Made by a program: the position numbers and the translations under genes. Below, in pieces: positions 6,175 through 45,659 of a stretch of 64,000 bases of DNA (position 1 is the first letter of the stretch; each line of letters opens with the position of its first letter). Under the pieces are notes generated by a model, which did not search any database, had not been told where the DNA came from, and saw only the letters and a program-made list of their open reading frames with translations. Where the stretch lies: IMG/VR virus record IMGVR_UViG_3300031251_000001, positions 62,001 to 126,000 of that record; one strand, given 5' to 3'.

Positions 6175-9100
6175 TTAGACGTTGCTCAATTGACCACTGG
6201 TCTTAGTATCCATCGTAATCGAACCGCCCTCCAGGCGGACGGAGCCGGTCAGTTTCAGTGTGCTAGGCCACTTGTCCTTGCCCTGACCCTGGCTCGTCTT
6301 GGCTTGCTCCCGCTGCTCTTCTGTGGTACGGGCTGACTCGAAATCGGTGAGCATCTGTCCGGTGTCGAGTTCGCCGCCACGGAGTCTGCCTTTGAACCGA
6401 TCAGCACGGCGCTTGAAGGCGGTAAAGTCTTCGTCTTTGGTAAGGCCGTAGGTCTTGCGGAACTCCTTAGTGTGGTAATCCGAACCTGATACTTTGTTGT
6501 ACTCGGAGAGGAGCATCGGAATGGGAGCACTGGACAGTTGACGGGCCTTGACCTTATCAGCGTCGGTGCCGCTTTCCATCAGGGCCTGCCCAGCTGCAGC
6601 CACTGCTGCCAGGCTGCGGGCATCCTGGAGACGACCCGACAGGGTATGGCCACCGCCACGGCCGGCAGCATCGGCGATCTCCTGACGCCGTGTCTCGTTG
6701 GCGTCTGATCCGAATAGCTTGAGATAGGAGTCGACCTGCCCGCGGATGTTACCTTGGCCGAGGGACTCTTCCTCGAACTTCTCGCCCAGGCGGTCACGAA
6801 TCTTCTTGAGTCCGGCAACGTCACTTTCGGTGACGCCCATTCCCACACCTTTAAGGTAACGGTCGCGAATCGATGACATGTCGTCGTCAGACTTCATGTT
6901 CTTGATCAACGTGTCACGGGTGACACCCTTTTCCTTAGCTGCGGCATCGAGCGACTTGCCGGCGTTAAGGAAGTCCTCAGCTTCGTTGATGCTGCCGCCC
7001 AGGGCACGATACTTAGGTAGCAGCTTGGCCAAGGAGTCAGCGTCTTTGTCGTTCCCGAAGAGAGAAGCGATCTCGGCCTGATCGGCCTTGGCCTGGGCAG
7101 CTGTTCCTTCGGTAACAGACATCCCGCGCATGCCCTGCTTGGCGTAATTACCGAGTTCAGCGTTAATCGCAGCCAGACGACGAGAGGCGTCCCGCTCAGT
7201 TCTCGCGTTACCCGACTTGCTGAGGTCGAGAGTGCTGACGCCGGCCTGGGCACGAGCTGCATCACCGTCAAAGTAAGAATCAGTGAGGTTCTGCTTCTCT
7301 GCCAGGAGAGCGTTGATCTTCTGGGCTGCCTCCAGGGTAGCTACTGAGCCTTGACCCTGTTTGCCCATCGCGATGATCCGGCTGGCGTTACCGCTCAGCA
7401 TCTGATTGAGATCGCTGTCTTCGTCCTGGACGGCATAGTAGTCTGCAGAACCTTTGAAGTAGTTGAAGCCAGTGTCGCGTGCCTTCTGCCGTTCGCCCAT
7501 GGCACCGGCGTAGCCTTCTTTCGTGATGCCGCCGTGCTTATTGATCTCCGCCATGGTGGGATCGTAGAAGGCATCCAGTCGCTTCTGGATGGCCTTGTTG
7601 ACATCACCATAGTAACCCATGCTCATGGATCGCTTGGAACCGATCTCCGCCTCGGTCAGGCCCAGTCGATCAGCTCGGCGACTAGCGTTGAGTACCGCTT
7701 CGATCTGGACGTGCGACATGCTGGGATTGGCAGCGGCGTACTGTTCAATCTCCTGCCGGCTGGCACGCGGGTTGACCCGCTCGCGGTCCCGGTTAGCCAG
7801 AACACGACCAAACTTGGAAAGGGTGCCTTCGTCCATGTCGAGCTTGCCGGCGTTCAGCTGCTGCTGAGCTTCGGTGATCTGCTGCGCGCTGGGCGATCGT
7901 CCTTGTATCTCTTCGCGGATGTACTTAGCTTTGATGACCGCATCACTGGCGGTGGGGTTGGCTGCTTTGATTTTCTTGGAGTACCAGTCAGGGACGCTGC
8001 CGGCGTCGGCAGCGGCCAGGTTCTTGGTCTTGATGTAGAGCATGGCGTCTTCGGTGGTGGCTTTCCCTTTGATACGCTCAATTGCAGCTGAGCCTTGAGC
8101 AGCCGTGACCTGAGTGCTAAAGTTACCCCCGATTCCAGCCAGATCGGAGCGAGTAGTATCAGAAGCAAGACGCATGCGATTAACATCATTGATGTCCTTA
8201 CTGGTGAAGCCGTTTTCGTTGTAGAGACCTTCTTTGGTGGCGAGTGCAACAAATTGATCGGCTGTAGCCTTCATGCCAAGTTCATGGGCTTCCAGTTCCT
8301 TCGTTAGCCGTTCCCGCTCAGCAGGATCGGTGACCTTGTCGATCGCTGCCTGCTTCTCAGCGAAACCGCGACGGGCCTTCTCGATGTCAGTGACCAGGCC
8401 GGTGAGCTTGCTGCTCACTTCCTTGGTCGGCACACCGAGCACACCGGCGACGACTTGGCTGATGCCGGCAGTATCAGTCAGTTTGACGTCCTGCAGGGAG
8501 CTGACCACGCGCATGAGCAGACCGCCACCCTTGTTGAGGGAGCGTAGCGATTCGCGAGCACGGCTGTCGAAGGAAGCCTGTTGGTTAAGACGGGCTTCGG
8601 CCTTGAATCGGTTGGGGCTGGTGAACGACATGGCGTTAGCGAAGTTCTGGAACTGACCGAATTGGCTGTTGCGGGTCATCTCATCCAGATGACCTGGTAG
8701 CGTCAGGGACAGCTCACGTTCAATCTTGGCCTTCTCCGTGGCGGGCAGCTTGTTGTACTCGGAATCGGCACTCAGGTGACGTTTGACGATCGCCTGGACC
8801 TTCTGGGGATCCTGCATCTCGGAGGGCTGCAGACGGCCCAAGTCACTGATGATGCCCTGGCTGGCTTTGTCAGCAATGGAGCTGGCGGCACCGTCGCTAA
8901 CCCGCTGACCCAGGCTCATACGGACAATGGCACCGGTCTGGGCTGCCGCCATGGTTCGCAGTTCATCGCCCTGGGCCGGCATGACCGATTTACCCAAGTC
9001 GTACTTGTTGATGGTCGCCTGGAGGGCGTAGTCTTGTCGCATCACCTGCTGAGCGGCAGACTGGGTCAGGCCCGCTCGTTGCATGAGGTTGGTGGTCGAC

Positions 9101-34993: not shown

Positions 34994-37900
34994 CTAACTC
35001 TTGACGGCCTTCTTTTCGTCTTCGATCTTGGTGTTCAACTCTTGCTGTCGAGCCAACAGTTTCGGGTCGTTCGGGGTCGCGGCCAACTGTTTGTCCAGTT
35101 GAGCCCGTTCTGAGTGATAGCTCTTCATCTTAGCCAGGGCATGGAATTGACCCCATTCGAGGTTTTCCGGAGCCTGGTTGAGACGTTGTACGTACTCCTG
35201 GCTGTTAGGAGATTTCTCCACATCGGCGTCCCGCAGCAGGGCCTTGCTGAGGGTGGAAGCACTGAAGGAGGAAGGATTCGTCAGCTCCTGCTCGGTACTC
35301 TTGACGACCTTGTTGATGTCGATGAGCTGACCCTGCAGCTTGGCGTACTCGGCCTGGGGCAGTGGGTTCTGACCGGAGTCGGACATCTGCAGCTGGGAGC
35401 GGATGTCAGCTCGCTGCTGCAGCTTGTCCCCGACTTCCTTCTCCACGTCGGCGAAATCGTTAGGCCGGGCCTTGGTCGCCAGGTTGGTGCGGAACTCCGA
35501 CAACTCCATGTCAGCCTTGCCGCGATTGTTCCGCATCACCTGTTTCTGGGCTTCAGCGACGTCGGGGTTGTTCAGAGCCTCATCGGTCTTACGCTCAAAG
35601 TATTGCTTGGAGAAGTTAGTGCTGTCTTGCACGCCTTTGACGTACTGATCATGTTGACCGCTGATCTGGGCAGCAGCACGGGCTGAGGTGACCGGAGTCA
35701 TGGCGGCGCCAAGCATACCCTTGGCTCGTGTTAATCCGGAGTCAGGCGTACCCAGAGCAGGGCTGCTCTGTTCGAGCTGCTGGGCACGGTTATTGATGTC
35801 TTCTTGGCTGACGGTACCCAGCAGGTTCTTGCCAGCGTCCACGAGAGCAGGAGCAGCAATCATGCCGGCACCGAGCGGAGCTACACCGGAGATAGCACCC
35901 TCCAGGGTGTTCTCAACGACGTCTTTGGTCTCAAGCGGATTGCCGGCAGCCAAGTCGTAGATCATGCCTGCCGTCGAGCCGCCGACGCCGCCCATTGCTC
36001 CACCCCGGATCATGCTCTTGGGACCGAGGGTCTTACCCAGGGAACGACCTACCGCGACCTGGGTGCCGTTCTGGGCAATCTGGTTACCGATCCAATTGGT
36101 GGTAGAGTTGCCTTCCGGAGCCTGGGCAAAATCAGCCGGCGGTTGCTCCGCTGCCGACTCGTGCTCAGGGTACTGCTCAATTTGCTGTTGTGGTTGCTGA
36201 CGTGGAGGTCCCCATTGGTGCTGGACGCCATATTGTTCCAGACCGGGTTGCTGATATTGAGGTCGCATTTGCGGAGGCAGTTGCGGAGCAGGGAACGGAG
36301 ACTGGCCTTGCTGCGGTTGCTGGGCCTGGTGAGCCGCCATACCCGCCATCGGCGTGTATTGGTTGCTACTGTTGAAGCCGGGCTTCGGCATGTTGTTCTT
36401 GGGAGCACCAGCGCTGTAGGGATTGTGCTGTCCCTGCCCTGGCGGCTTTTCCCAGGGGACTTCGGGTGGCTTCACCGGATCCAGCGGGCTGATCTGGCTT
36501 CGGCTTGGATCGGGCTCGAAGTCGGCGGTCTTGTCGAACGCTTTATCGAAGGAGTCTTTGTAGCCCGGCGTGCAGTTCTTACACTCACTCGACGGGATGT
36601 CATAGACTGGCACCGCACCCATCGATCGAGGGCCGTGGCAGGGTTTACGACAGCCCTCGCAGTAATGGTACTGAGGGCGTGGCCCCTTGTACCAATGCTC
36701 TTTGCCGCCGTGTGTCACGAGATAGTGAGTATCTGTGTCACGAGAAGTATCAGGATCGTGTGTGTCACTGGCTACCTTGGGCAACGGTTTGCCTTCAGGT
36801 GGGAGCTCGACCGGCTTGCTCTTGTGTTGGAAGTAGCCTTCGCGGCCGAAGTCAGCAGCATGGGCCAGGCTCGGCACAAAACTGGTACCGGTTCGGTCGC
36901 TGACCGCACCCCGGTGAACCGAAGCCAGGAGACCCTTGCTCAGGTTCGAGCCGTACATGCGGGTGATCGGGTCGGGATCGTGCAGCAGGTTATCACTGGC
37001 TCGCACCATCTCGAAGTTGAACGGTGGTGGCTGGTCGTGGACGTGGACCTCATCGAGTTTGAGATCGTCCATCTCTTTGGCCATCTTGGGCGTCACCTTC
37101 ACACCGATCGTGTGGTGCAGGATCGGCGATTCCAGGTACTTCCCGATGGCCTTCTTGGGGTGGAGACGTTGCCCGCCCTCACGGGGTTCGTACGCCGCCT
37201 CGATCATGTGGTAAGGGACGACATCGTCCGGGATGTAGTCACCGACAAAGTCGTTGAGCCTGACGTGATTGATGAGGCCACGGCTGATGAGTTCCAGGTT
37301 ACGGCGATCGGCTCGCATGTTCTGGCTCTTGGCCAGATCCATCATCGTGTTGGTCCAGTAGCGACGGCCCTCACCGATGCCTTTGTGCATCGTGATCTTT
37401 TCGGGGTTGGGGATGCCGTTGGAGAGCGTATCGCCGGCCTCGACGGAATCACCAACCTTGACCGTGGCTGCTTGCTCCGGAGCTACGTAGTGGCGATTGG
37501 AGCCGACCCAGACGTAGCTACCGCCGGCAGGTGCCTTCTGGATACGTTGCACCGTGCCGTCAGCGACAGCGTGAGCAGCTCCGCCCTGGAAGGTGCTCGG
37601 GATCTGTGCCATCTGCTCGAACGACTTAAAGCCGGAGACAGCGACTTGACCGGCCACGCCGCCGGTGTGCTTAGAGTTGAGACCCATCTGGGTGACGGGC
37701 TCACTGACACCCTGGGAGGTGGTCATCCCTGGCATGTCGCCACGCTGCACCAGGTGCCCGTTTTCATCGAGACCTACGTCGTAGGCGTAGACGCCACCGT
37801 CAGGGCTGCTGCGGGCGATGGGGGAGCGGACAACCAGCTTCTTATGCCCGCCACGGTCGAGAGAGTCCAGGATCTTCTGCGTGATGACCGTATTGGCTTT

Positions 37901-38695
37901 GAACGGGCCGGTATCGCGGGCGAGGAGTGCCCCCACGCTTCCTTTATCGGATACGTCAACGGGAAGGCCCCGAAGGTACTGCTTGCGATCTTTAACGTGT
38001 TCGTCATCATCGGACACGTCGGTATCGACGACCACATTCCGGTGGGAGACTTGGTTAAGTAGTTTGTTGTAGTATCCAGCATTGGCCACCCCCAGCTTGA
38101 CGTCCACGACTCCCTTGCGGGCACCGAAGAGGCTGGCGTGATATTCAGGGTAAGACAACCCTTGTGAGTAGCTACGGTACACCGGCAGGAGCAGCGGGTT
38201 GTCCTGGTTATCGTTGTACTGCAGATCGCCGCCGACCAGGCTGTTGTAGTTGGCTTTGTTGCCGCGAGCTCCGGAGTGGATCTGCATCGCCAGAGGGTTC
38301 TTGGCGGCAATACCTTCATCGTAGACCTCGCTGTTCTGCTGTTGCTGAGCAGCCGAGGTGAGTTCGATAATCTTCTTCTTGCGTGTTTCGGGGGATAGGC
38401 CGGCGTGAAGTACCCGTTGGATCTGGGTATCGAGCTTGGCTTGGATACGCTGGGCCGTGGGGCTCTTGCGCATGTGCTCCAAGTCGAAGGAGTAACCTCC
38501 GGTGGACTGGGCGTGGAAGCGACCGATGTCCGAGAGTTTCTTGCTGACGTCGACGTACTGGTCGGGGTGCCGCTGAGCGACCTCCCGTAGTAACGTCTCA
38601 AGGCCCTTCTTGTCGAGCACCCGCGTGTAATCGCGGAGATCGGCAGGAAGGGCCATGTTAGCCTTGAGCTGGCCAGCGGTTGTTCTGATTGGCAT
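34994..38695 (-). CDS. Phage RNA polymerase beta'-like subunit, C-terminal part, with long non-RNAP extension
   Basis: 'SGARGN', 'GARKGVVD', bridge helix 'AGYYNKLL' and trigger loop 'SEPVTQMGLNSKHTGG'. The last ~590 aa are unrelated to RNAP. Confidence 0.85.
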   Translation of the reverse strand: MPIRTTAGQLKANMALPADLRDYTRVLDKKGLETLLREVAQRHPDQYVDVSKKLSDIGRFHAQSTGGYSFDLEHMRKSPTAQRIQAKLDTQIQRVLHAGLSPETRKKKIIELTSAAQQQQNSEVYDEGIAAKNPLAMQIHSGARGNKANYNSLVGGDLQYNDNQDNPLLLPVYRSYSQGLSYPEYHASLFGARKGVVDVKLGVANAGYYNKLLNQVSHRNVVVDTDVSDDDEHVKDRKQYLRGLPVDVSDKGSVGALLARDTGPFKANTVITQKILDSLDRGGHKKLVVRSPIARSSPDGGVYAYDVGLDENGHLVQRGDMPGMTTSQGVSEPVTQMGLNSKHTGGVAGQVAVSGFKSFEQMAQIPSTFQGGAAHAVADGTVQRIQKAPAGGSYVWVGSNRHYVAPEQAATVKVGDSVEAGDTLSNGIPNPEKITMHKGIGEGRRYWTNTMMDLAKSQNMRADRRNLELISRGLINHVRLNDFVGDYIPDDVVPYHMIEAAYEPREGGQRLHPKKAIGKYLESPILHHTIGVKVTPKMAKEMDDLKLDEVHVHDQPPPFNFEMVRASDNLLHDPDPITRMYGSNLSKGLLASVHRGAVSDRTGTSFVPSLAHAADFGREGYFQHKSKPVELPPEGKPLPKVASDTHDPDTSRDTDTHYLVTHGGKEHWYKGPRPQYHYCEGCRKPCHGPRSMGAVPVYDIPSSECKNCTPGYKDSFDKAFDKTADFEPDPSRSQISPLDPVKPPEVPWEKPPGQGQHNPYSAGAPKNNMPKPGFNSSNQYTPMAGMAAHQAQQPQQGQSPFPAPQLPPQMRPQYQQPGLEQYGVQHQWGPPRQQPQQQIEQYPEHESAAEQPPADFAQAPEGNSTTNWIGNQIAQNGTQVAVGRSLGKTLGPKSMIRGGAMGGVGGSTAGMIYDLAAGNPLETKDVVENTLEGAISGVAPLGAGMIAAPALVDAGKNLLGTVSQEDINNRAQQLEQSSPALGTPDSGLTRAKGMLGAAMTPVTSARAAAQISGQHDQYVKGVQDSTNFSKQYFERKTDEALNNPDVAEAQKQVMRNNRGKADMELSEFRTNLATKARPNDFADVEKEVGDKLQQRADIRSQLQMSDSGQNPLPQAEYAKLQGQLIDINKVVKSTEQELTNPSSFSASTLSKALLRDADVEKSPNSQEYVQRLNQAPENLEWGQFHALAKMKSYHSERAQLDKQLAATPNDPKLLARQQELNTKIEDEKKAVKS

Positions 38696-38715
38696 CCTTG
38701 CCTCAGTCCCTGCTG

Positions 38716-39576
38716 CTATTGGTTATCGAGGTCCTCGTGATTGAGATCCTCGTTCTTGGGCTCTTCATGAACCTCTTTCACTTTACCATGATCGTCCGTT
38801 TCGGACTTCTCTTCGGTATGAGTGTGCTCCGCTGTGGTGTGTTCGGTCGTGCCGCCGACAGGGACCGTAGCGGTTGCATGTTTTGCAACTTCTGATTCAA
38901 TTTTTGAAACAGTTGGTGCAACGTGAGGAGCGGGGGCAGGGGCAGGTTTGGTGGCAACCGGCTTGACCGGTTCAGGACCCTTGTGCGGAGCCGCTACAGG
39001 TGCCACGACTGGCTTGGGTGTCGTGTGCACTGCTGCTGGTGGCTGCTCGTGCTCGGTGATTGTTTCCGGGCAGTTGGGAGCATTCACGGGACGAACGATA
39101 GCCCAGCCTTCGGGGATCTCGGCTTCACTGACCAGGTAATCACACAGGGTGACCAGTGCTTCTTCCTGGCCCTGGGGTACACGAATGATCGTGCGGTTCT
39201 GATCGGCTGCCGCAGCAGTCACGATGGCGTGCTGCCAGGCGTCGACAGGGAGATGGATCAGAGTGATGTGGGGTGATGCGGTACCACCCTTGGAGTTGCG
39301 TGGCACCACTCGCGGGGGCTGGGCTGCAGGGAGCTTCTTGGCGTTGGCGTAATAAGCATCAGGAGCCGAAGTGAGGTCCTGGGGGTTACGGCCGCGAATC
39401 GGGGTTCCTTGTTGTCGTTCTGCGTTCATGCGAGCACCATCGAATATGTCGACGGCCATGGCGCCTGCTGAGGTGCCCTGACCGGTGCGACGGGGTTGAG
39501 GCTTCTTGGGACTTCCGTAGTAAGCGTGTTCAGGGGATTCAATACCGCCATTGAGATCGCGGTGTGGTAGGGACAT
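38716..39576 (-). CDS. Hypothetical protein
   Basis: 286 aa with a disordered Pro/Glu/His-rich C-terminus. Confidence 0.65.
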   Translation of the reverse strand: MSLPHRDLNGGIESPEHAYYGSPKKPQPRRTGQGTSAGAMAVDIFDGARMNAERQQGTPIRGRNPQDLTSAPDAYYANAKKLPAAQPPRVVPRNSKGGTASPHITLIHLPVDAWQHAIVTAAAADQNRTIIRVPQGQEEALVTLCDYLVSEAEIPEGWAIVRPVNAPNCPETITEHEQPPAAVHTTPKPVVAPVAAPHKGPEPVKPVATKPAPAPAPHVAPTVSKIESEVAKHATATVPVGGTTEHTTAEHTHTEEKSETDDHGKVKEVHEEPKNEDLNHEDLDNQ

Positions 39577-39578
39577 GA

Positions 39579-39803
39579 CTAACCTCCCAGTCGGATGAGT
39601 TGGGCTGGCTTTTCCCCGAGCCGACTGAGTACCGCAGGGAAATCGGGTTCACCGTGTTTACTGACAACGATCTGGCGACCTACGCTGTAGCAGACCACCA
39701 GGGCGTTGCCGTCAATGTCACGGATGACCACCTGCTCGATAGGAATCACGTCGCGTTTAGCTCCGCGACCAATGCCTCCGGCAGTGACGATATCCGCAAA
39801 CAT
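39579..39803 (-). CDS. Small hypothetical protein
   Basis: 74 aa, tightly packed, GGAG RBS. Confidence 0.6.
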   Translation of the reverse strand: MFADIVTAGGIGRGAKRDVIPIEQVVIRDIDGNALVVCYSVGRQIVVSKHGEPDFPAVLSRLGEKPAQLIRLGG

Positions 39804-39804
39804 A

Positions 39805-40632
39805 CTAGCTCCGCTTCAGGCTGTTGAGTCTGGACAGGATGGATTGGTTCATAGGTCGCACCGATGGTAACGGACGCATAGCCGGCATGGCAACCCCATC
39901 TCCGGCATCGGAAGCCTGCTTACCCTGGAGAGGGTCGATCGGCTGGATGGGGTCGGTAGGCATGCCAGGGATACCCTGGGAAGGATCCTGACCGCCGCCT
40001 GCAGCTCCACCAGCACCGCCACCAGACATAGCTCCGCCTGGTTGTTGCTGCTGAGCCATCATCTCGTCCGGCGTGGCAACCATGTGGCTGGCGGGCATAG
40101 GAATGCCCTTAGCGTCGATCATGGCAGCGGCCAGCTTCTGGATAAGCACCAGACCGTTGTTGATGTCGACCTTGCTCTTGCCGCCCTCGCCCTGTTGGAC
40201 CAGGGTGGGCATGGAGTTCTGCACCTGGGTCAAGGCTGCCTGGATCACACCAGGATCAACCAACTCATTACCCGACTGCTTGCCCTGCTCGTCTTCAAGG
40301 ACAGCGCTCATCATGCGGATGCACTGGATGATAACCGAGCCTGGGTCGATCTTCACCTTGGGAGCCTGGGGCGGCATCATGCCGGGCATACCGGGTTGAC
40401 CCATGCCGGGTTGACCACCGGGGGCCATCATGCCGGGTTGCGGTTGGGGGATGTCCATAGGCTGATCAGGAGCAACGCCAGGAACGGGGGAACCGCCTCC
40501 CGATGGATCGGCAGGCGGTGCGCTGGCTCCTGGATCGTTACCACTGACTCCCGCCGGCATCATCCCGTCTGCTGTCTTGTAGAGACCGTAGTCAGCACGA
40601 CGACGGAGGCGAGCGAAAATGGAATCAGTCAT
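39805..40632 (-). CDS. Pro/Gly/Met/Gln-rich putative virion protein
   Basis: 275 aa with KTA near the N-terminus, KQA near the C-terminus, and two similar 'K(V/I)D...(I/V).(C/I)...(S/A)A' helices. Confidence 0.65.
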   Translation of the reverse strand: MTDSIFARLRRRADYGLYKTADGMMPAGVSGNDPGASAPPADPSGGGSPVPGVAPDQPMDIPQPQPGMMAPGGQPGMGQPGMPGMMPPQAPKVKIDPGSVIIQCIRMMSAVLEDEQGKQSGNELVDPGVIQAALTQVQNSMPTLVQQGEGGKSKVDINNGLVLIQKLAAAMIDAKGIPMPASHMVATPDEMMAQQQQPGGAMSGGGAGGAAGGGQDPSQGIPGMPTDPIQPIDPLQGKQASDAGDGVAMPAMRPLPSVRPMNQSILSRLNSLKRS

Positions 40633-40634
40633 GA

Positions 40635-43600
40635 CTACCCCTTGTCTTGCAAAATCTCGACCTCATCGTGAGGATCGATGGTTCTTTGTTCTAACGCTTT
40701 TAGCACATCCTGGATGTTGCGGAAAGTACGCAACGGACGTTTGCTCTTATTGGATGTTAGCTCATAGAGCCCACCCACGTACTCCTGTGACGGCATGGCC
40801 ACTGGTGTTTTACGGTCAGTCGGGCTGATCAGGTGCTTGCTGGGGAGCATGCGTTCGTAGGTCTCTTTTGCCGCCTCTTCGGTGGCGGGCACGTGGAACT
40901 GCGAGGCGTCGCCATCGAAGTCCATGTTGAAACCCTTGAGCACCAGCGTGGGCACGTGGACGGCGTTGCCGGCCACCAGCTGCGGACGGAAGCCCATATA
41001 GCCCAGTTTGTGGAGCACCGGGGCGCGATTCATTTGGACCGGCTTTTGATCCATGACGCGGAGAAGGGAGCGGTGTGCCTCGTCATCTTGTTGGTTGATC
41101 GATTCCATGGCGTTAGCCACCGTACGACCGCGGCGAACCATGTCACGAACGATCTCTTTCTTGTAGACATCGAACGCCAATCGCTTGGGGATACCGATCT
41201 GGTCCATGTTCAAGTCAGGGTTGGGCACCACTACCGAGCGACCAACCTGGTCCACGGCGGAGCCAATGAGACGCCGTTGAACCGTGCCCATTTTAGGATT
41301 GCTTCCAAAGATATGCTGCAGAACTCCCCGTACGTTGCGCTCCTTGGACTTCTTTGTAACAGGATCTCCAAGACCCGTGACTGCCTTGAGAGCGTTGTAG
41401 AGGGTGAGATGTTCTGGTCCGACGTAGTCATCGCCCATCTCCTTGTGGAAGTCCTTCACCGCTTCGTTGGCGGAGTGGAGTTCTTTATAGAGCGGGTTGG
41501 CGTCAGCCACCATAGGAACACCTGAGCCGCCCAGTGTCGAGATGCGACGGTAAGCAGGTGGGATCACTGGGGCGGACTTCAGGGTCCAATCGCGTGGGTG
41601 CATGCCCACACGTTTGGTGTCCATCATGTAGTACAGCTTCCGAATCGCTTCATCCCGCTTGGTCTTACTACCCGACTGAAATGCTTGTTTAGCCGTCGCA
41701 ATCTCATGGTCGAGGTTAATACCTTCCAACGCTTTGACGATCGCATCAGGGCCTGTCTTGCCATTCAAGTGCTCCTTCCCGGCCAGGATGTCCTCGAACT
41801 TGCCTTGCGTCAGACCGAGGACTCGTTTGACCGGGTCTTCCATGACCGGGTTGACGAGAGGAGTAACGAGAGGAATCTTCGACCACTTCATGCCGCCATG
41901 TCCACCGGTGATCTCCGGATCGAACAGGCCACCGGGAACGGGGTCCAGGGCTTCACCTGATTTGACCGTCTCGGCGTTCTTGAGGGTGCGACCCTCAGCC
42001 AGATCCTCGACTGACTTGTTAGTCATCGCCAGGAAGTGCGTACGCTTGCCGTCCGGCACGGGATCGATGCCAGCTGCCCGGAGTTGGGCCAGATATTTCT
42101 GGTAAACGGTGGTCGTGTGCGGCTCGACCGGCTTCTGTCCACGCTGATATTGCAGCCAGTAAGTGTCATTACGCTGGCCACGAACCAGGCCCGCATCGCG
42201 GAGGACTTCATAAGCACCGTGGGAAAGGATGGCGTTCACATCCAGGAGCGAGACGCGCTTGGAGTTGGAGACGTGAGCACCGTTCTTGAGGTAGTAGCTG
42301 GCACCGTCTTCGACCGTGATGTCGTAGACCTTCTCACCGGGCCTCTTGAACCGGGTGTAGATGGTGGCGACTACGAGCGTGGCCGGCCCATAAAGGCGTT
42401 GTGAACTTTTCCGAGGAAACCGCTCATGGCCCCGGTAAAGGTCTGTCCGATCGACGTCCGCATCCGCCGAACCAAGTCGGCGGTCGGCTTTGGACCTGGC
42501 TGGTCGAGCTTCTTGAATATGCTTTGCGTCCTTTCGGGCGTGAAGGCTGGTAAGACGTACGGTCGCTGCGGGGCAGCGGCTTCCTGGCCATCGATAGGGG
42601 CGGACTGCTGAGTGGGGTCCATCGCAATAAATCTCCTGACCGGGCTGCAGCAGATTAGCAGCGATCTTCGTGTCGTGGATAAAGAACTCGTGACCGGGGG
42701 TGCATTCCACCACGGAACCATCGGTGAAAGTGATGACCACCAAGTAACGGGGAGCATCGTACTCCATCCAATCGGTGATCTCGCGGTAGACCGGAATCAT
42801 GTTCTCGTTGAGCAGGACCTTCGTGGGAACGCGAACGGCTTTCCGCTTCTTGACAATCTCACCGATCGTGTCGGAACCGAACTCGGTCCACAGCTTGGTC
42901 GTCCCGACAAAGCAGCCACCGTAACCACCCTTGGCCGGCTCGTCATCCTGGTTATAGGCCCCGCTCGAGCGGGCCTGTCCCTTGGATTCCGAAGTGTGAT
43001 GCAGTTTCATCATGAAGCGGGTGCCGGTCGCCACGCCGGGGATCTTCTGTCCTGTCTCGGGATCGGTGATCTCTTCCGAGAGCTTCATGCCGTGTTTGCC
43101 CAACTCGTTGCGGACGTACTCGTCGTGATCTTGCCCAGTGAAATCCTTCACCAGGTAGGGTTGACCTGTCTTGCGGGCGATCTTCCCCAGGCCGAGCTCG
43201 TGGGCCTGGGCAGCGTTGGTGCGGGAGATCATGCCGTTGGGGCTGAGCAGTAGCTCGAAGGGGTTGCCGTCTTTGTCGTGCGGCATCTGGCTGTCAGGAA
43301 GGATCTTCGAGATCACCCCCTTATCACCGAAACGCCCTGAGAGCTTATCCGCCTCTACAGTCGGGTGGTAGGATTTGACGATGACGACGGGGCCTTTCTT
43401 GCCCTGCTGCACGTCCACGACTTCACCATCGTGGTCATGGTCCCAGGCGACCGAGGCGTCCTGCCAGGAGTCCGACTTGCGTCGCAGGAGGCGGTTGGGA
43501 TTCATGCCCTTCTGCTTGGCGGCGACGATGAGTGGCTGACCGTGGGTGACCTTCTGGCCGACCTTGATGACGCCAGTGTCGTCCATCTTGCCGAGCTGCT

Positions 43601-45659
43601 CACGAGTGAAGCGGCCAGGGAACAGATCAGAGAAGGCCTGGCGGCCCTGCTTGGTCTTGTTGTCGACCTCCAGCTCGTGCTGGTAGGCGTGCTCTGAAGT
43701 CATCTTCCTGGCAAGAGAATCCGAGATGACCACGGCGTCGTTGTGATTAAGGCCCTTCCAGGGGACGTAGGCGGAGTAAGCATTGATGCCCATCGCCATG
43801 GTCCCGTGCTGATCGGTATAGTTGCTGCCGGCGAGAAGCTGACCCTTCTGTACGGTGCTGCCTTCCTGGACAATGGGTTCCTGGTTGAGCAGGGACTTAC
43901 GGTTGAAGGGCAGGTTCTTGTAGTAGGGCTTGATGCTGGTCGTGCCGTCCGGGTGCTGCATGTGGATTTCATCTTCCGTCACCTTCGTCACACGACCAGG
44001 CTTATCGGCCGCGACGGCTCCAAAACGATGACCCAACCATTGTTCGTAGGGCTGGTTGGTCTCCTCGTCCACGTTCTGTACGTGAGGAGCCTCGCGATGC
44101 TGGAGGGATAGCGCCTGCATGTACATGCGGGCACCCATGGAGTTTCGCTGTCCCTTGTTGGAGCTCTGGAACGGGATGGTGTTGGTCAGCGGGCTGAAGT
44201 TACGCGACCCGTGCGGGGAGACATAATCCAGCTCGGACTTCTTGGCATAGTCGAGCTCACCGTTGCGGATCACCGGCACATAATCATTCTTCGATTCCAT
44301 CGACTTGTAGAAGCCGATCGTCTTGCCGGCCAGGTCCTGGGGCGATCGCCACAGCTTCTTGCCGCTCTTGGGATCGATGAACTGGCTGTAGAGCCTGCCG
44401 TCGCTGCCTTTGCGTGAAGCAACGCTGGCAGAGAGATCGACGCCGGCCCGTTCCGATTCCGGTGTCTTGACGACATCAAGGAAGCCCAGGTGCGAGTTCT
44501 GCACCGAGCGGGCCTCCAGCGGGATGGCAGCTCCGGAGATGCCACCCTCACCCATGCGGGTGACGTTATGCAGGCGGTCAGCAAACTCAGAGGTATTGAT
44601 TTCTTCCAGGGGCTGGGCGACGCCGCTGCGCAGCAGGACGTGATCCAGTTGATGGGTCAGGGCACCCGAAGGCATGTGCTGCAGGTGGCCCGCTTTGGAC
44701 ATCTTGTAGAGGAGTTTCTTCTGCCAACCCTCAGAATCCTTGGCGATACGCTCGGCAAAGAGGTCTTCTGGCCCCAGGAACTTCTGATACTCGAGCGCGT
44801 CACGATCATCGGGTTTGGCCTCGCCCCGGTTGATCTTGATCAGCTTACTGGTGGCAGCCAGGAGCACGTCCTTGTTGAGCGTGGGGCTGACGTTGCCGAT
44901 CGTGCTCTTGTTGACGAACGGATTGACCTTGTAGCCCTGATACTTCTCGACGAGCTTGGCGATACGATCGACGCCCGGTGCCGCCAGCTCTTCTTTGGAG
45001 AGTAGCTTGTGAGACAGTCGATCAAGTGCGTCACGTTCCTTGACCCCGCGGTTGGACTGGGCGATCTCTTTGCCCCAGTGGTGTTCGATCTCGTCGTCCT
45101 TGGCTCCCATGGCGGTCAGCAGCGGCAGGAGGGGTGCGGTGGATCCGGCGATGTTGAGATGGAAGGTGCCCTTGTCGGGATCGAAGCCGATGCGGTGCGT
45201 CAGGCCTTCACCAGGAAGGATATTGAGGTAAGTCTCCAGTTCGCCGTTACCTTTGCGTCGGTTGTAGACGCCCGGTTCGAGACGCTGTTGGTTACGAACG
45301 GCGTACTTGGTCCCGTTACGCACGACGGTCCCGAAGTCGCTAAAGTGTGGCACGGTGGCAACGACTTGCTTGCGGGAGTCAACCATCTTGTCGGTGGCAT
45401 TGTCGTAGAGCTCCCACGTCCCTTCGACACGCCGGCCCAGCGATCCACGCGAGAGGATGGCCTTCTTGACCTCGCTGGGCTTGCGGTATTCAGGGTCGAT
45501 ATATTTGGGGTTGGTGAGCTTGAGCGTGTGCGTGCGATTCTTCACCGGGGGCAGATTCTGCATAGCACCGAGCACGTTGCCGTACACGTTTTTACGCAAC
45601 GCCCCAGTATCGCCGAACTCACGGAGGGTCACTCCCTCCGGGACTCCATCGAGATCCAT
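40635..45659 (-). CDS. Phage multisubunit-type RNA polymerase: beta fused to beta' N-terminal catalytic part, intein-containing
   Basis: Beta motifs 'KTPESERAG', 'DKLSGRFGDKGVI', 'RFMMKLHH'. Beta' motifs 'NRAPVLHK' and catalytic 'NMDFDGD'. Confidence 0.92.
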   Translation of the reverse strand: MDLDGVPEGVTLREFGDTGALRKNVYGNVLGAMQNLPPVKNRTHTLKLTNPKYIDPEYRKPSEVKKAILSRGSLGRRVEGTWELYDNATDKMVDSRKQVVATVPHFSDFGTVVRNGTKYAVRNQQRLEPGVYNRRKGNGELETYLNILPGEGLTHRIGFDPDKGTFHLNIAGSTAPLLPLLTAMGAKDDEIEHHWGKEIAQSNRGVKERDALDRLSHKLLSKEELAAPGVDRIAKLVEKYQGYKVNPFVNKSTIGNVSPTLNKDVLLAATSKLIKINRGEAKPDDRDALEYQKFLGPEDLFAERIAKDSEGWQKKLLYKMSKAGHLQHMPSGALTHQLDHVLLRSGVAQPLEEINTSEFADRLHNVTRMGEGGISGAAIPLEARSVQNSHLGFLDVVKTPESERAGVDLSASVASRKGSDGRLYSQFIDPKSGKKLWRSPQDLAGKTIGFYKSMESKNDYVPVIRNGELDYAKKSELDYVSPHGSRNFSPLTNTIPFQSSNKGQRNSMGARMYMQALSLQHREAPHVQNVDEETNQPYEQWLGHRFGAVAADKPGRVTKVTEDEIHMQHPDGTTSIKPYYKNLPFNRKSLLNQEPIVQEGSTVQKGQLLAGSNYTDQHGTMAMGINAYSAYVPWKGLNHNDAVVISDSLARKMTSEHAYQHELEVDNKTKQGRQAFSDLFPGRFTREQLGKMDDTGVIKVGQKVTHGQPLIVAAKQKGMNPNRLLRRKSDSWQDASVAWDHDHDGEVVDVQQGKKGPVVIVKSYHPTVEADKLSGRFGDKGVISKILPDSQMPHDKDGNPFELLLSPNGMISRTNAAQAHELGLGKIARKTGQPYLVKDFTGQDHDEYVRNELGKHGMKLSEEITDPETGQKIPGVATGTRFMMKLHHTSESKGQARSSGAYNQDDEPAKGGYGGCFVGTTKLWTEFGSDTIGEIVKKRKAVRVPTKVLLNENMIPVYREITDWMEYDAPRYLVVITFTDGSVVECTPGHEFFIHDTKIAANLLQPGQEIYCDGPHSAVRPYRWPGSRCPAATVRLTSLHARKDAKHIQEARPARSKADRRLGSADADVDRTDLYRGHERFPRKSSQRLYGPATLVVATIYTRFKRPGEKVYDITVEDGASYYLKNGAHVSNSKRVSLLDVNAILSHGAYEVLRDAGLVRGQRNDTYWLQYQRGQKPVEPHTTTVYQKYLAQLRAAGIDPVPDGKRTHFLAMTNKSVEDLAEGRTLKNAETVKSGEALDPVPGGLFDPEITGGHGGMKWSKIPLVTPLVNPVMEDPVKRVLGLTQGKFEDILAGKEHLNGKTGPDAIVKALEGINLDHEIATAKQAFQSGSKTKRDEAIRKLYYMMDTKRVGMHPRDWTLKSAPVIPPAYRRISTLGGSGVPMVADANPLYKELHSANEAVKDFHKEMGDDYVGPEHLTLYNALKAVTGLGDPVTKKSKERNVRGVLQHIFGSNPKMGTVQRRLIGSAVDQVGRSVVVPNPDLNMDQIGIPKRLAFDVYKKEIVRDMVRRGRTVANAMESINQQDDEAHRSLLRVMDQKPVQMNRAPVLHKLGYMGFRPQLVAGNAVHVPTLVLKGFNMDFDGDASQFHVPATEEAAKETYERMLPSKHLISPTDRKTPVAMPSQEYVGGLYELTSNKSKRPLRTFRNIQDVLKALEQRTIDPHDEVEILQDKG
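42264..42914 (-). mobile_element. Intein (217 aa, no homing endonuclease) in the RNAP gene
   Basis: GG|CFVGTT block A, 'ECTPGHEFF' block B, 'VYDITVE' block F and 'HVSN|S' C-terminal junction. Confidence 0.9.
42371..42622 (-). CDS. Nested 83-aa ORF inside the intein (+1 frame)
   Basis: AGGAG 10 nt before the ATG, GC-ending codon bias, and boundaries matching the intein linker. Confidence 0.6.
   Translation of the reverse strand: MDPTQQSAPIDGQEAAAPQRPYVLPAFTPERTQSIFKKLDQPGPKPTADLVRRMRTSIGQTFTGAMSGFLGKVHNAFMGRPRS

What the first reader, a model, noticed from the sequence alone, without database searches (positions are those of the whole stretch)
42264..42914. An intein that carries a nested, out-of-frame passenger gene instead of a homing endonuclease
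Seen: the RNAP gene contains a 217-aa intein (CFVGTT...HVSN|S). Between the N- and C-terminal splicing halves, where endonucleases normally sit, the in-frame translation is Arg-rich and looks off-frame. The +1 frame holds a clean 83-codon ORF (42622-42371, MDPTQQSAPIDGQEAAAPQRPYVLPAF...FMGRPRS) with AGGAG 10 nt upstream and mostly G/C-ending codons. Its start and stop coincide with the linker edges. The RNAP frame has no stop and no ATG/GTG/TTG restart in the linker, so this is not a conventional split intein. Known: mini-intein linkers tolerate arbitrary sequence, and phage split inteins can flank a free-standing gene. Inference: the intein acts as a neutral container that lets an independent gene sit inside an essential polymerase gene, or this is an intermediate in the gain or loss of a split intein.
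Basis: partly seen in the sequence, partly recalled or inferred. Interest (0 to 1): 0.9.

Follow-up and report, generated by a model that had tools for sequence, protein, structure and literature searches.

The report
Intein carrying an out-of-frame small gene
A self-splicing protein insert (intein) in a giant phage's RNA polymerase gene has a real small gene hidden in another reading frame; in related phages the same gene lies free between the two halves of a split version of this intein.

Summary
The RNAP beta-beta'N gene (40635-45659, minus strand) carries a 217-aa intein (42264-42914). Its middle is translated in the RNAP frame as an Arg-rich stretch that is predicted to be disordered. An 83-codon ORF (42622-42371) with AGGAG 10 nt upstream lies in the +1 frame.

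This span is the only place in the 5-kb gene where another frame beats the RNAP frame on the phage's codon usage.

Four distant homologues have the same layout. In three of them dN/dS in the linker is 0.09-0.26 in the +1 frame and 1.7-2.7 in the RNAP frame.

At least ten other related loci have a truly split intein at this site. There IntN ends in a stop, a free-standing ORF of about 100 aa follows, and its stop overlaps the IntC start. A profile built only from the free-standing ORFs picks the window's nested ORF as the best hit in the whole window. The score is weak (12 bits, E 0.01).

The ORF family is tiny, has no known domain and has no nuclease signature.

Best reading: this is a read-through (cis-splicing) form of a split-intein cassette, with its companion gene now overprinted on the linker. 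Out-of-frame endonuclease genes in inteins and "fractured genes" are already described, so this is a new variant and not a new kind. The ORF's function is unknown.

The parts
40635..45659 (-). RNA polymerase beta fused to the N-terminal part of beta' (1674-aa precursor; about 1457 aa after splicing). This is the host gene of the intein.
   Evidence: ORF list and translation. Pfam Rpb2_6 at 1e-48 and Rpb1_2 at 1e-23. Over 1000 homologues, mostly 1455-1480 aa without an intein.
42264..42914 (-). The whole 217-aa intein, inserted between ...KGGYGG and SKRVSLLDVNA... of the beta part.
   Evidence: Cys1, block B TPGH, C-terminal Asn and Ser+1. Pfam Intein_splicing E 8e-5, below the gathering score. 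Best PDB sequence match is the Npu DnaE intein. The AF2 model matches mini-intein structures, TM 0.8-0.85 on the target.
42615..42914 (-). N-terminal splicing half (intein residues 1-100), equivalent to IntN of the split relatives.
   Evidence: pLDDT about 90, all-beta. Aligns with the IntN of split loci, which end ...PGDDL(L/M)E* at this point.
42387..42611 (-). Linker as read in the RNAP frame (intein residues 102-176): Arg-rich and predicted disordered. The sequence shows no constraint in this frame except that it stays free of stops.
   Evidence: pLDDT below 50 and no secondary structure. Arg 16.7%. Frame-0 translations are not conserved among homologues and apparent dN/dS exceeds 1.
42633..42637 (-). 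AGGAG, the probable ribosome-binding site of the nested ORF. It is formed by the Gln-Glu codons at the end of the N-terminal splicing half.
   Evidence: An equivalent GGAG lies 8-13 nt before the ATG in four homologues (GAGG in the fifth, L002) and in the split loci.
42371..42622 (-). Nested ORF in the +1 frame: 83 codons plus TAG. It encodes a small protein predicted to have a disordered N-terminus, a short helix and a long C-terminal helix.
   Evidence: Codon-usage LLR. Positional homologues are under purifying selection. Top hit of the free-standing-family HMM in the window, E 0.01. C-terminal motif shared with the family. AF2 model.
42264..42383 (-). C-terminal splicing half (intein residues 178-217), equivalent to IntC of the split relatives but without a start codon. 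The nested ORF's TAG overlaps its first strand (GTA GTC).
   Evidence: pLDDT 81-95. Compare codons ACG CTC GTA GTC here with the GTG AAG GT... starts in split loci.

Best explanation
The locus is a contiguous, cis-splicing mini-intein in the essential RNAP beta-beta'N gene of an uncultured phage of about 214 kb. It belongs to an intein lineage that usually occurs as a three-cistron cassette: IntN with a stop, a small ORF of about 100 aa, and IntC with its own start. In the window the IntN stop and the IntC start are absent, so ribosomes translating the polymerase read through the small ORF in a different register. This produces a disordered junk linker of about 80 aa at the canonical endonuclease or split site. 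The linker is removed with the intein by protein splicing (inferred). The small ORF itself is translated separately from its own AGGAG-N10-ATG in the +1 frame and gives an 83-aa helical protein (inferred from sequence evidence). Selection acts on the +1 frame for protein sequence and on the RNAP frame only to avoid stops. The small protein is not a recognisable nuclease and is not needed for splicing, because sister inteins lack it. Its function is unknown. My best guess is an accessory gene of the intein element or the phage that uses this slot as its niche. I favour an origin by re-fusion of a split form through loss of one stop codon, but the direction is not settled.
For: Shown in the window:
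- The anatomy is as described.
- The coding signal switches to the +1 frame only in the linker.
- The two intein halves fold as a HINT domain and the linker is disordered.

Shown in relatives with the same layout:
- Four homologous RNAP genes from other samples (L002-L005) have an ATG-started +1 ORF of 85-91 codons at the same intein position, with an upstream GGAG (GAGG in L002).
- Substitutions shift from RNAP-frame position 3 in the flanks to RNAP-frame position 1 in the linker.
- BLASTP scores for +1 frame / frame 0 / +2 frame are 59/24/30, 85/67/59 and 20/9.6/12 bits.
- dN/dS is 0.085-0.26 in the +1 frame and 1.65-2.7 in frame 0 in the linker; flanks give 0.02-0.23.
- Synonymous resampling shows that the open RNAP frame is unlikely by chance in L003-L005: P = 0.034, 0.004 and 0.019. 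For the window alone P = 0.165.

Shown in split relatives:
- L006, L009-L025 and L028 have IntN with a stop, the ORF, and a stop-start overlap with IntC. The halves are sometimes in different frames.
- An HMM built only from free-standing ORFs ranks the +1 pieces of L003, L005, the window and L004 above all other six-frame pieces. It also ranks the nested ORF first among 859 pieces of the window.
- Sister inteins without the ORF exist: minis P0004 and P0008, and the ORF-less split L027.
Against: - There is no expression, read-mapping or splicing data. All of the evidence is comparative sequence analysis.
- No close relative of the window was found, so purifying selection on the window's own ORF is inferred. 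The support is its codon usage, a 31%-identical ORF in L002 (E 0.002) and a weak HMM score (12 bits).
- The window's ORF and L002's ORF lack the family's N-terminal LLAAKAAALRxK helix, so they could be degenerating.
- Profile-profile tests between the clades were not significant.
- The fused homologues were found through a protein search that can return only long read-through products. This is an ascertainment bias for the open-frame statistic.
- The window's intein sits on a long branch. It lacks both the penultimate His and the block F His, so splicing competence is assumed from the essentiality of the host gene.
- The trees do not resolve the direction of change.
Confidence: 0.8

Rival explanations
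1. The nested ORF in the window is a decaying relic. The cassette re-fused, the small gene lost its role and is no longer expressed, and it still looks coding only because too little time has passed.
For: The window and L002 lack the N-terminal motif that all split-form ORFs keep. The HMM score is only 12 bits. Internal initiation inside a translated gene is usually inefficient (general knowledge).
Against: The window and L002 are only 56% identical in RNAP. Even so, both keep an intact ORF with the same MDP start, the same FTPxRT motif, the same stop position and an upstream SD-like motif (AGGAG in the window, GAGG in L002). The codon-usage signal in the +1 frame is strong. In the second fused clade dN/dS of the +1 frame is 0.09-0.26.
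Confidence: 0.1
2. Assembly or sequencing artefact. The true genome has a stop after IntN and a start before IntC, making it an ordinary split intein with a free-standing gene. Indel or base errors created the read-through.
For: The source is a metagenome assembly and reads cannot be inspected here. The codon before the nested ATG is TGC, one change away from TGA.
Against: Five independent assemblies from different samples and two clades all show an open RNAP frame. No start codon exists for the C half in the window, so at least two separate errors would be needed. Stop avoidance in L003-L005 is statistically non-random.
Confidence: 0.04
3. Chance ORF. A GC-rich gene throws up long alternative-frame ORFs, and the linker is simply a degraded endonuclease remnant of a mini-intein.
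For: Alternative same-strand ORFs of 82-104 aa occur elsewhere in the gene. LAGLIDADG-bearing inteins occupy the same site in relatives.
Against: Only this span shows a +1 coding signal. The +1 frame is conserved and under purifying selection in homologues. Free-standing homologues exist. No frame of the linker matches the endonuclease parts of the LAGLIDADG-bearing inteins.
Confidence: 0.02
4. The direction is the reverse of the one I favour. The read-through form with an overprinted ORF is ancestral: a small gene cassette invaded a mini-intein out of frame, and the split forms arose later by gaining a stop and a start.
For: In the C-extein tree the two fused clades branch outside the split clade. 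The secondary-invasion model is the one proposed for out-of-frame endonucleases (bioRxiv 10.64898/2026.09.14.751524). No relic of an IntC start is visible in any fused form.
Against: The insert would have had to be stop-free in the RNAP frame on arrival. Split forms are more numerous and more diverse. In GC-rich split loci a single stop separates the halves (L014), and P(open) is 0.82 in L002, so re-fusion is a one-step event. Deep nodes of both trees are weakly supported.
Confidence: 0.35

Closest known systems
Non-canonical inteins with an out-of-frame or antisense homing-endonuclease ORF: cyanobacterial DnaX intein and actinobacteriophage inteins with a frame-3 endonuclease VII-like gene (Gorbalenya 1998, NAR 26:1741, known to me only through citations in the papers read; bioRxiv 10.1101/2025.01.02.630785; bioRxiv 10.64898/2026.09.14.751524)
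   Same: A separate ORF sits in the endonuclease slot of a contiguous intein in another reading frame. The in-frame translation of that region is unstructured. Selection is low-omega in the ORF's frame and apparently above 1 in the intein frame (paper sections read).
   Different: Here the ORF is 83-91 codons with no nuclease motif, family or fold. It has free-standing homologues between split intein halves.
Fractured genes: split inteins flanking a free-standing endonuclease gene (Dassa et al. 2009, PMC2677866)
   Same: The relatives L006-L025 have exactly this layout. The 3' end of the intervening gene overlaps the IntC start, as in 15 of Dassa's loci. That paper's model foresees re-creation of a contiguous gene.
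   Different: Dassa's step IIIa puts the intervening gene in frame with the intein. Here the re-joined gene reads through it out of frame. The intervening gene is not a GIY-YIG or Vsr-like endonuclease. The host gene is a phage multisubunit RNAP, which is not mentioned in that paper (0 occurrences of 'RNA polymerase').
ShiLan insertion: a hidden out-of-frame HNH endonuclease in a phage methylase gene (PMC11855218)
   Same: The insert is stop-free in the host frame and hides a gene in another frame. The host-frame translation is predicted to be a loop (abstract read).
   Different: ShiLan has no splicing domains, so the loop stays in the protein. Here intein halves flank the insert and should remove it.
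Fully embedded out-of-frame phage genes such as lambda Rz1 within Rz (from my own knowledge, not checked here)
   Same: A small gene with its own SD and ATG lies entirely inside another gene in the +1 frame.
   Different: In Rz/Rz1 both frames encode functional protein. Here the outer frame in the overlap is disposable and is excised after translation.

Membership tests
Intein (HINT splicing domain, class 1) | Nucleophile (Cys/Ser) as first residue; Asn as last residue; Ser/Thr/Cys as first C-extein residue | tested here: met
   Cys916, Asn1132 and Ser1133. These residues are invariant in the five-sequence alignment.
Intein (HINT splicing domain, class 1) | Block B TxxH | tested here: met
   TPGH at intein residues 72-75; T72 and H75 are invariant.
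Intein (HINT splicing domain, class 1) | Penultimate His (block G) and block F His | tested here: not met
   The C-terminus is HVSN. The penultimate residue is Ser in every intein at this site, including those that carry an endonuclease. The block F His present in most relatives is absent in the window. These residues are frequent in inteins but not universal.
Intein (HINT splicing domain, class 1) | HINT fold | tested here: met
   AF2 pLDDT is about 90 for residues 1-100 and 178-217. Foldseek matches Mtu RecA, Npu/Ssp DnaE, gp41-1 and NrdJ-1 inteins at E down to 1e-7 and target TM up to 0.85.
Intein (HINT splicing domain, class 1) | Curated profile match (Pfam PF14890) | tested here: inconclusive
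   22.9 bits, E 8e-5, below the gathering score of 35.8.
Intein (HINT splicing domain, class 1) | Protein splicing activity | not testable with these tools
   Inferred from insertion in a conserved stretch of beta (between the KGGxxG and SKRxSLLD motifs conserved across homologues) of an essential enzyme. Most homologues have no insert there.
Non-canonical intein with out-of-frame ORF | Separate ORF in another frame inside the endonuclease slot, under frame-specific purifying selection | tested here: met
Non-canonical intein with out-of-frame ORF | The ORF encodes a homing endonuclease | tested here: not met
   No hit in Pfam, PHROGs, NCBIfam or PADLOC. The model is two helices with no PDB match. 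No catalytic-type residues are conserved.
Fractured gene / naturally split intein (Dassa 2009) | IntN ends in a stop codon and IntC has its own start codon | tested here: not met
   The window has no stop and no start codon after intein codon 69. The feature is met in relatives L006, L009-L025 and L027.
Fractured gene / naturally split intein (Dassa 2009) | Intervening free-standing gene whose 3' end overlaps the IntC start | tested here: inconclusive
   In the window the ORF's TAG overlaps the first strand of the C half, but the ORF is not free-standing. In relatives the overlap is GTGA or ATGA.
Small ORF family of the split RNAP intein (P0121-P0134 and the intervening ORFs of L006-L025) | Position between the N and C splicing halves, with its own SD-ATG at the IntN edge | tested here: met
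Small ORF family of the split RNAP intein (P0121-P0134 and the intervening ORFs of L006-L025) | C-terminal motif R..L/R...........G..G+(F/V)H..(F/Y) | tested here: met
   The window has RRMRTSIG...GFLGKVHNAF. The HMM from free-standing members scores 12.2 bits, E 0.01 over 859 pieces, and this is the top hit. The match is weak.
Small ORF family of the split RNAP intein (P0121-P0134 and the intervening ORFs of L006-L025) | N-terminal helix (M)DxLxLLAAKAAALRxK | tested here: not met
   Absent in the window and in L002; degenerate in L003-L005.

The most novel reading that the evidence does not exclude
The small ORF is a previously unrecognised, non-nuclease gene family that lives only in the endonuclease or split slot of this intein lineage. 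It can persist free-standing between split halves or overprinted on a read-through linker. If so, one insertion site documents the whole series: mini-intein, split with cargo, split without cargo, and out-of-frame re-fusion. This would mean that inteins can host and protect cargo other than homing endonucleases, and that splitting of an intein is reversible in nature.
Probability: 0.45. Interest if true: 0.75.

Novelty: new variant of a known kind. Interest (0 to 1): 0.62.

Why it matters
Inteins are thought to carry only homing endonucleases in their central slot. Split inteins are thought to arise when a free-standing endonuclease gene breaks a contiguous one. This site matters for three reasons.

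1. It carries a conserved cargo gene under purifying selection that has no nuclease features.
2. At one site, the window and its relatives show every state of the proposed pathway, plus one not foreseen: re-joining of the two halves out of frame with the cargo. The cargo survives as an overlapping gene and the host-frame copy becomes disposable linker.
3. Annotation pipelines miss such genes. None of the five nested ORFs was present in a database of 5.8 billion proteins.

The split relatives are also new natural split inteins that could be tested as protein-ligation tools.

Tried and rejected
- Searches with the 83-aa peptide alone found nothing in Pfam, PHROGs, the GenBank phage collection or the 5.8-billion-protein set.
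- Peptide-pattern scans of viral contigs with nested-ORF alignments failed or found nothing.
- The word-indexed profile search was swamped by low-complexity candidates and returned only one member.
- Profile-profile comparisons between the three ORF clades were not significant: probability about 2%, single-comparison E 0.02-0.07. Homology across clades therefore rests on position, frame, architecture and the family HMM.
- I tested whether the linker is a degraded LAGLIDADG endonuclease. Nine endonuclease-bearing inteins at the same site match only the splicing halves and no frame of the linker.
- P0100, a possible split form from its 974-aa length, proved to be only N-terminally truncated.
- No promoter-like or terminator-like site lies in 42000-43200.
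- A scan of 185,579 reference genomes found no copy.
- Foldseek on the low-confidence ORF model found nothing.
- The trees could not settle whether the split or the fused state came first.
Full report
WHAT IS IN THE WINDOW

The window is part of a 214-kb viral contig, IMGVR_UViG_3300031251_000001. A 5025-nt ORF on the minus strand (40635-45659) encodes a fusion of RNA polymerase beta with the N-terminal part of beta' (Pfam Rpb2_6 and Rpb1_2). The rest of beta' is encoded three genes downstream, as in relatives.

Residues 916-1132 interrupt the conserved sequence ...KGGYGG / SKRVSLLDVNA.... The insert starts with Cys, contains TPGH, and ends in Asn followed by Ser.
- the 83-codon +1 ORF runs 42622-42371;
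- AGGAG lies 10 nt upstream of the ATG;
- the polymerase frame has no stop and no restart codon in the linker.

IS THE +1 ORF MORE THAN CHANCE?

Length alone is not evidence. The same gene has other same-strand alternative ORFs of 82-104 aa.

Two composition tests are specific.
- GC by codon position is 0.63/0.40/0.73 for the gene. In the linker it becomes 0.70/0.60/0.53, which is the gene's usual pattern shifted by one base.
- I took a codon-usage table from eleven neighbouring genes and scored 162 sliding windows across the gene. The +1 frame beats the polymerase frame only in the four windows covering 42659-42390. There the log-likelihood difference is +8.5 to +17.5; elsewhere it averages -42 with sd 14.

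In the polymerase frame the linker is 16.7% Arg against 5.7% elsewhere.

AlphaFold models residues 1-100 and 178-217 as a confident all-beta domain. Residues 102-176 have pLDDT below 50 and no secondary structure. The ordered part matches mini-intein crystal structures: Mtu RecA, Npu and Ssp DnaE, gp41-1 and NrdJ-1.

HOMOLOGUES WITH THE SAME LAYOUT

A region-restricted protein search found more than 1000 related polymerases. Most are 1455-1480 aa and have no insert at this site. Four of them carry an intein of 208-224 aa at exactly this site with a linker of similar length:
- P0002 / L002;
- P0003 / L003;
- P0006 / L004;
- P0009 / L005.

They come from different samples and are 42-56% identical to the window's protein.

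In all four the +1 frame holds an ATG-started ORF of 85-91 codons. It begins 295-307 nt into the intein (292 nt in the window) and has GGAG 8-13 nt upstream, or GAGG in L002.

The +1 translations are conserved and the in-frame linkers are not. BLASTP scores for +1 / frame 0 / +2 are as follows:

| Pair | +1 frame | frame 0 | +2 frame |
|---|---|---|---|
| L003-L004 | 59 | 24 | 30 |
| L004-L005 | 85 | 67 | 59 |
| window-L002 | 20 (E 0.002) | 9.6 | 12 |

Substitutions sit at polymerase-frame position 3 in the flanks. In the linker they sit at polymerase-frame position 1, which is the wobble position of the nested ORF.

Nei-Gojobori dN/dS in the linker core is 0.085, 0.26 and 0.22 in the +1 frame, against 2.5, 2.7 and 1.65 in the polymerase frame. 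Flanking intein and extein give 0.02-0.23 in the polymerase frame.

I also kept each nested protein fixed and redrew synonymous codons from the host gene's usage. The polymerase frame then stays stop-free with these probabilities:

| Locus | P(no frame-0 stop) |
|---|---|
| L003 | 0.034 |
| L004 | 0.004 |
| L005 | 0.019 |
| window | 0.165 |
| L002 (70% GC) | 0.82 |

So in at least one clade the polymerase frame is kept open by selection. The caveat is that these homologues were found through their long read-through products.

SPLIT RELATIVES

A degenerate DNA pattern for the C-terminal junction (VSN|SKR...DVNA) does not depend on gene calls. It found 2-5 loci in IMG/VR and 14 in JGI metagenomes, counting the window's own contig in each set.

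Nearly all of these are true split inteins at the same site. L006 (219-kb contig) is a clear example:
- the N part ends ...PGDDLLEG with TAG;
- one base later an ATG opens a 95-codon ORF preceded by GGAGGGG;
- that ORF's TGA overlaps the GTG that starts a 42-aa IntC (ctGTGAaa).

The same plan recurs in L009-L021. The IntC start lies 37-45 codons before the intein end and usually overlaps the ORF's stop. In L009, L015, L019 and L020 the N and C parts are in different frames, so they cannot be one gene.

The intervening ORFs share an architecture:
- an N-terminal helix, (M)DxLxLLAAKAAALRxK;
- a variable middle that is Pro-rich, or Gly/Ala-rich and hydrophobic;
- a C-terminal motif, R..L...........G..G+(F/V)H..(F/Y)..G.

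A full HMMER scan of 1.84 billion representative proteins with a profile of twelve such ORFs found only 13 small proteins of 95-194 aa at E below 0.001. I checked the genomic context of four of them, and all four sit between IntN and IntC of this split polymerase intein.

I built an HMM from free-standing members only. Among all six-frame pieces of the five fused inteins, it ranks the +1 pieces of L003, L005, the window and L004 first. Among the 859 stop-free pieces of the whole 64-kb window, it ranks the nested ORF first (12.2 bits, E 0.01). The window's GFLGKVHNAF aligns with RAAGKFHHQF and GIASRFHNTF of free-standing members.

The window and L002 lack the N-terminal helix. Profile-profile tests between the clades are not significant. 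Membership is therefore supported, but weakly at the sequence level.

OTHER STATES AT THE SAME SITE

- Mini-inteins without any linker: P0004 (138 aa) and P0008 (161 aa). P0008 is closest to the split L006/L019 pair.
- A split intein with only a 43-nt spacer and no ORF: L027.
- Inteins of 370-396 aa with LAGLIDADG endonucleases. These form their own clade (98% support), and their endonuclease parts match no frame of the linker.
- The window's nearest relative by C-extein, P0015, has no intein at this site but has two elsewhere.

The small ORF is therefore not needed for splicing, and the element is patchily distributed.

HOW IT MOST LIKELY WORKS

Shown: the polymerase frame runs through the nested gene, and selection acts on the +1 frame.

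Inferred:
1. The 1674-aa precursor is translated through the linker.
2. The two intein halves fold around a disordered loop at the canonical endonuclease or split position.
3. The intein splices itself out, giving a polymerase of about 1457 aa.
4. The 83-aa protein is made separately from its own ribosome-binding site. AlphaFold predicts a disordered N-terminus, a short helix and a 30-residue helix (pLDDT 69).

The protein's function is unknown. It has no hit in Pfam, PHROGs, NCBIfam, PADLOC or the PDB and shows no nuclease-like conservation. My rough estimates for its role are:
- about 0.35 for an element-associated accessory that favours persistence or spread of the intein cassette;
- about 0.35 for a phage-beneficial small protein that found a safe slot;
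- about 0.15 for a helper of fragment assembly in the split forms;
- about 0.15 for a decaying relic in the window's lineage.

ORIGIN

I favour re-fusion of a split cassette, at about 60:40. The reasons are:
- the ORF's start sits exactly where IntN stops in relatives, and its stop sits on the first strand of IntC;
- the codon before the ATG in the window is TGC, one change from TGA;
- in GC-rich split loci a single stop separates the halves (L014);
- two separate fused clades contrast with one larger and more diverse split group.

The reverse remains possible: out-of-frame invasion of a mini-intein followed by splitting. The deep nodes of both trees are weak.

COMPARISON WITH WHAT IS KNOWN

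- Out-of-frame or antisense endonuclease ORFs inside inteins are described. The sources are Gorbalenya 1998 (known to me only through citations) and two recent preprints from the Gogarten group.
- An out-of-frame HNH gene hidden in a phage methylase insert is also described.
- Split inteins that flank a free-standing endonuclease gene, with a 3' overlap onto IntC, are the "fractured genes" of Dassa et al. 2009. That paper's model includes in-frame re-fusion.

The present case combines both themes and differs in three ways:
- the cargo is a small protein with no nuclease features;
- the re-joined gene reads through the cargo out of frame;
- the host is a phage multisubunit RNA polymerase.

It is therefore a new variant of a known kind.

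LIMITS

There is no expression, splicing or read-level evidence. No close relative of the window was found. The ORF's function is unknown. The direction of evolution is unresolved.

Noticed in passing
L027:11500-11700 (IMGVR_UViG_3300036768_001863, minus strand): A split intein at the same RNAP site with no intervening ORF. IntN ends ...GDDLMEC with TAG, a 43-nt spacer containing GGGAGGG follows, and then ATG starts IntC. The halves are in different frames.
   Followed up: partly
L015:1715-2863 (+); the same ORF is partly present in L011: The intervening ORF here is 383 aa. It has the family's N-terminal motif twice, a hydrophobic Gly/Ala-rich segment and an HELGH (zinc-peptidase-like) motif. 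The only Pfam hit is weak (Zn_peptidase_2, E 0.07).
   Followed up: partly
L016, oriented coordinates 326-511 (between the family ORF and IntC): An extra 61-codon ORF lies between the small family ORF and the IntC start, so the gap between the intein halves can hold more than one gene.
   Followed up: no
P0015 (2055 aa), the window's nearest relative by C-extein: It has no intein at the window's site but has two large inserts elsewhere in the same polymerase: one after ...RTPEC and one inside the NADFDGD active-site region. Several homologues reach 2200-2900 aa with multiple inteins, so this polymerase family is an intein hot spot.
   Followed up: partly
window 34994-45659 (-): The polymerase is encoded as beta fused to the N-terminal part of beta' (40635-45659). 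Three small genes follow, and then a 1233-aa ORF (34994-38695) for the rest of beta'. The same synteny is seen in L002-L005. The closest phage records are Vibrio phages D181, D148 and D69 and Salmonella phage Arash, at about 35% identity over a 601-aa query around the intein site, without the intein.
   Followed up: partly
window 43700-43972, 44270-44584, 45200-45448 (-): Other same-strand alternative-frame ORFs of 82-104 aa lie inside the RNAP gene. None shows a coding signal in the codon-usage scan, so they are useful negative controls.
   Followed up: yes
L014, oriented coordinates 7944-8005: The IntN reading frame runs 20 codons past the start of the intervening ORF before it reaches its only stop. 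This is a partial overlap, intermediate between the clean split form and the full read-through form.
   Followed up: partly
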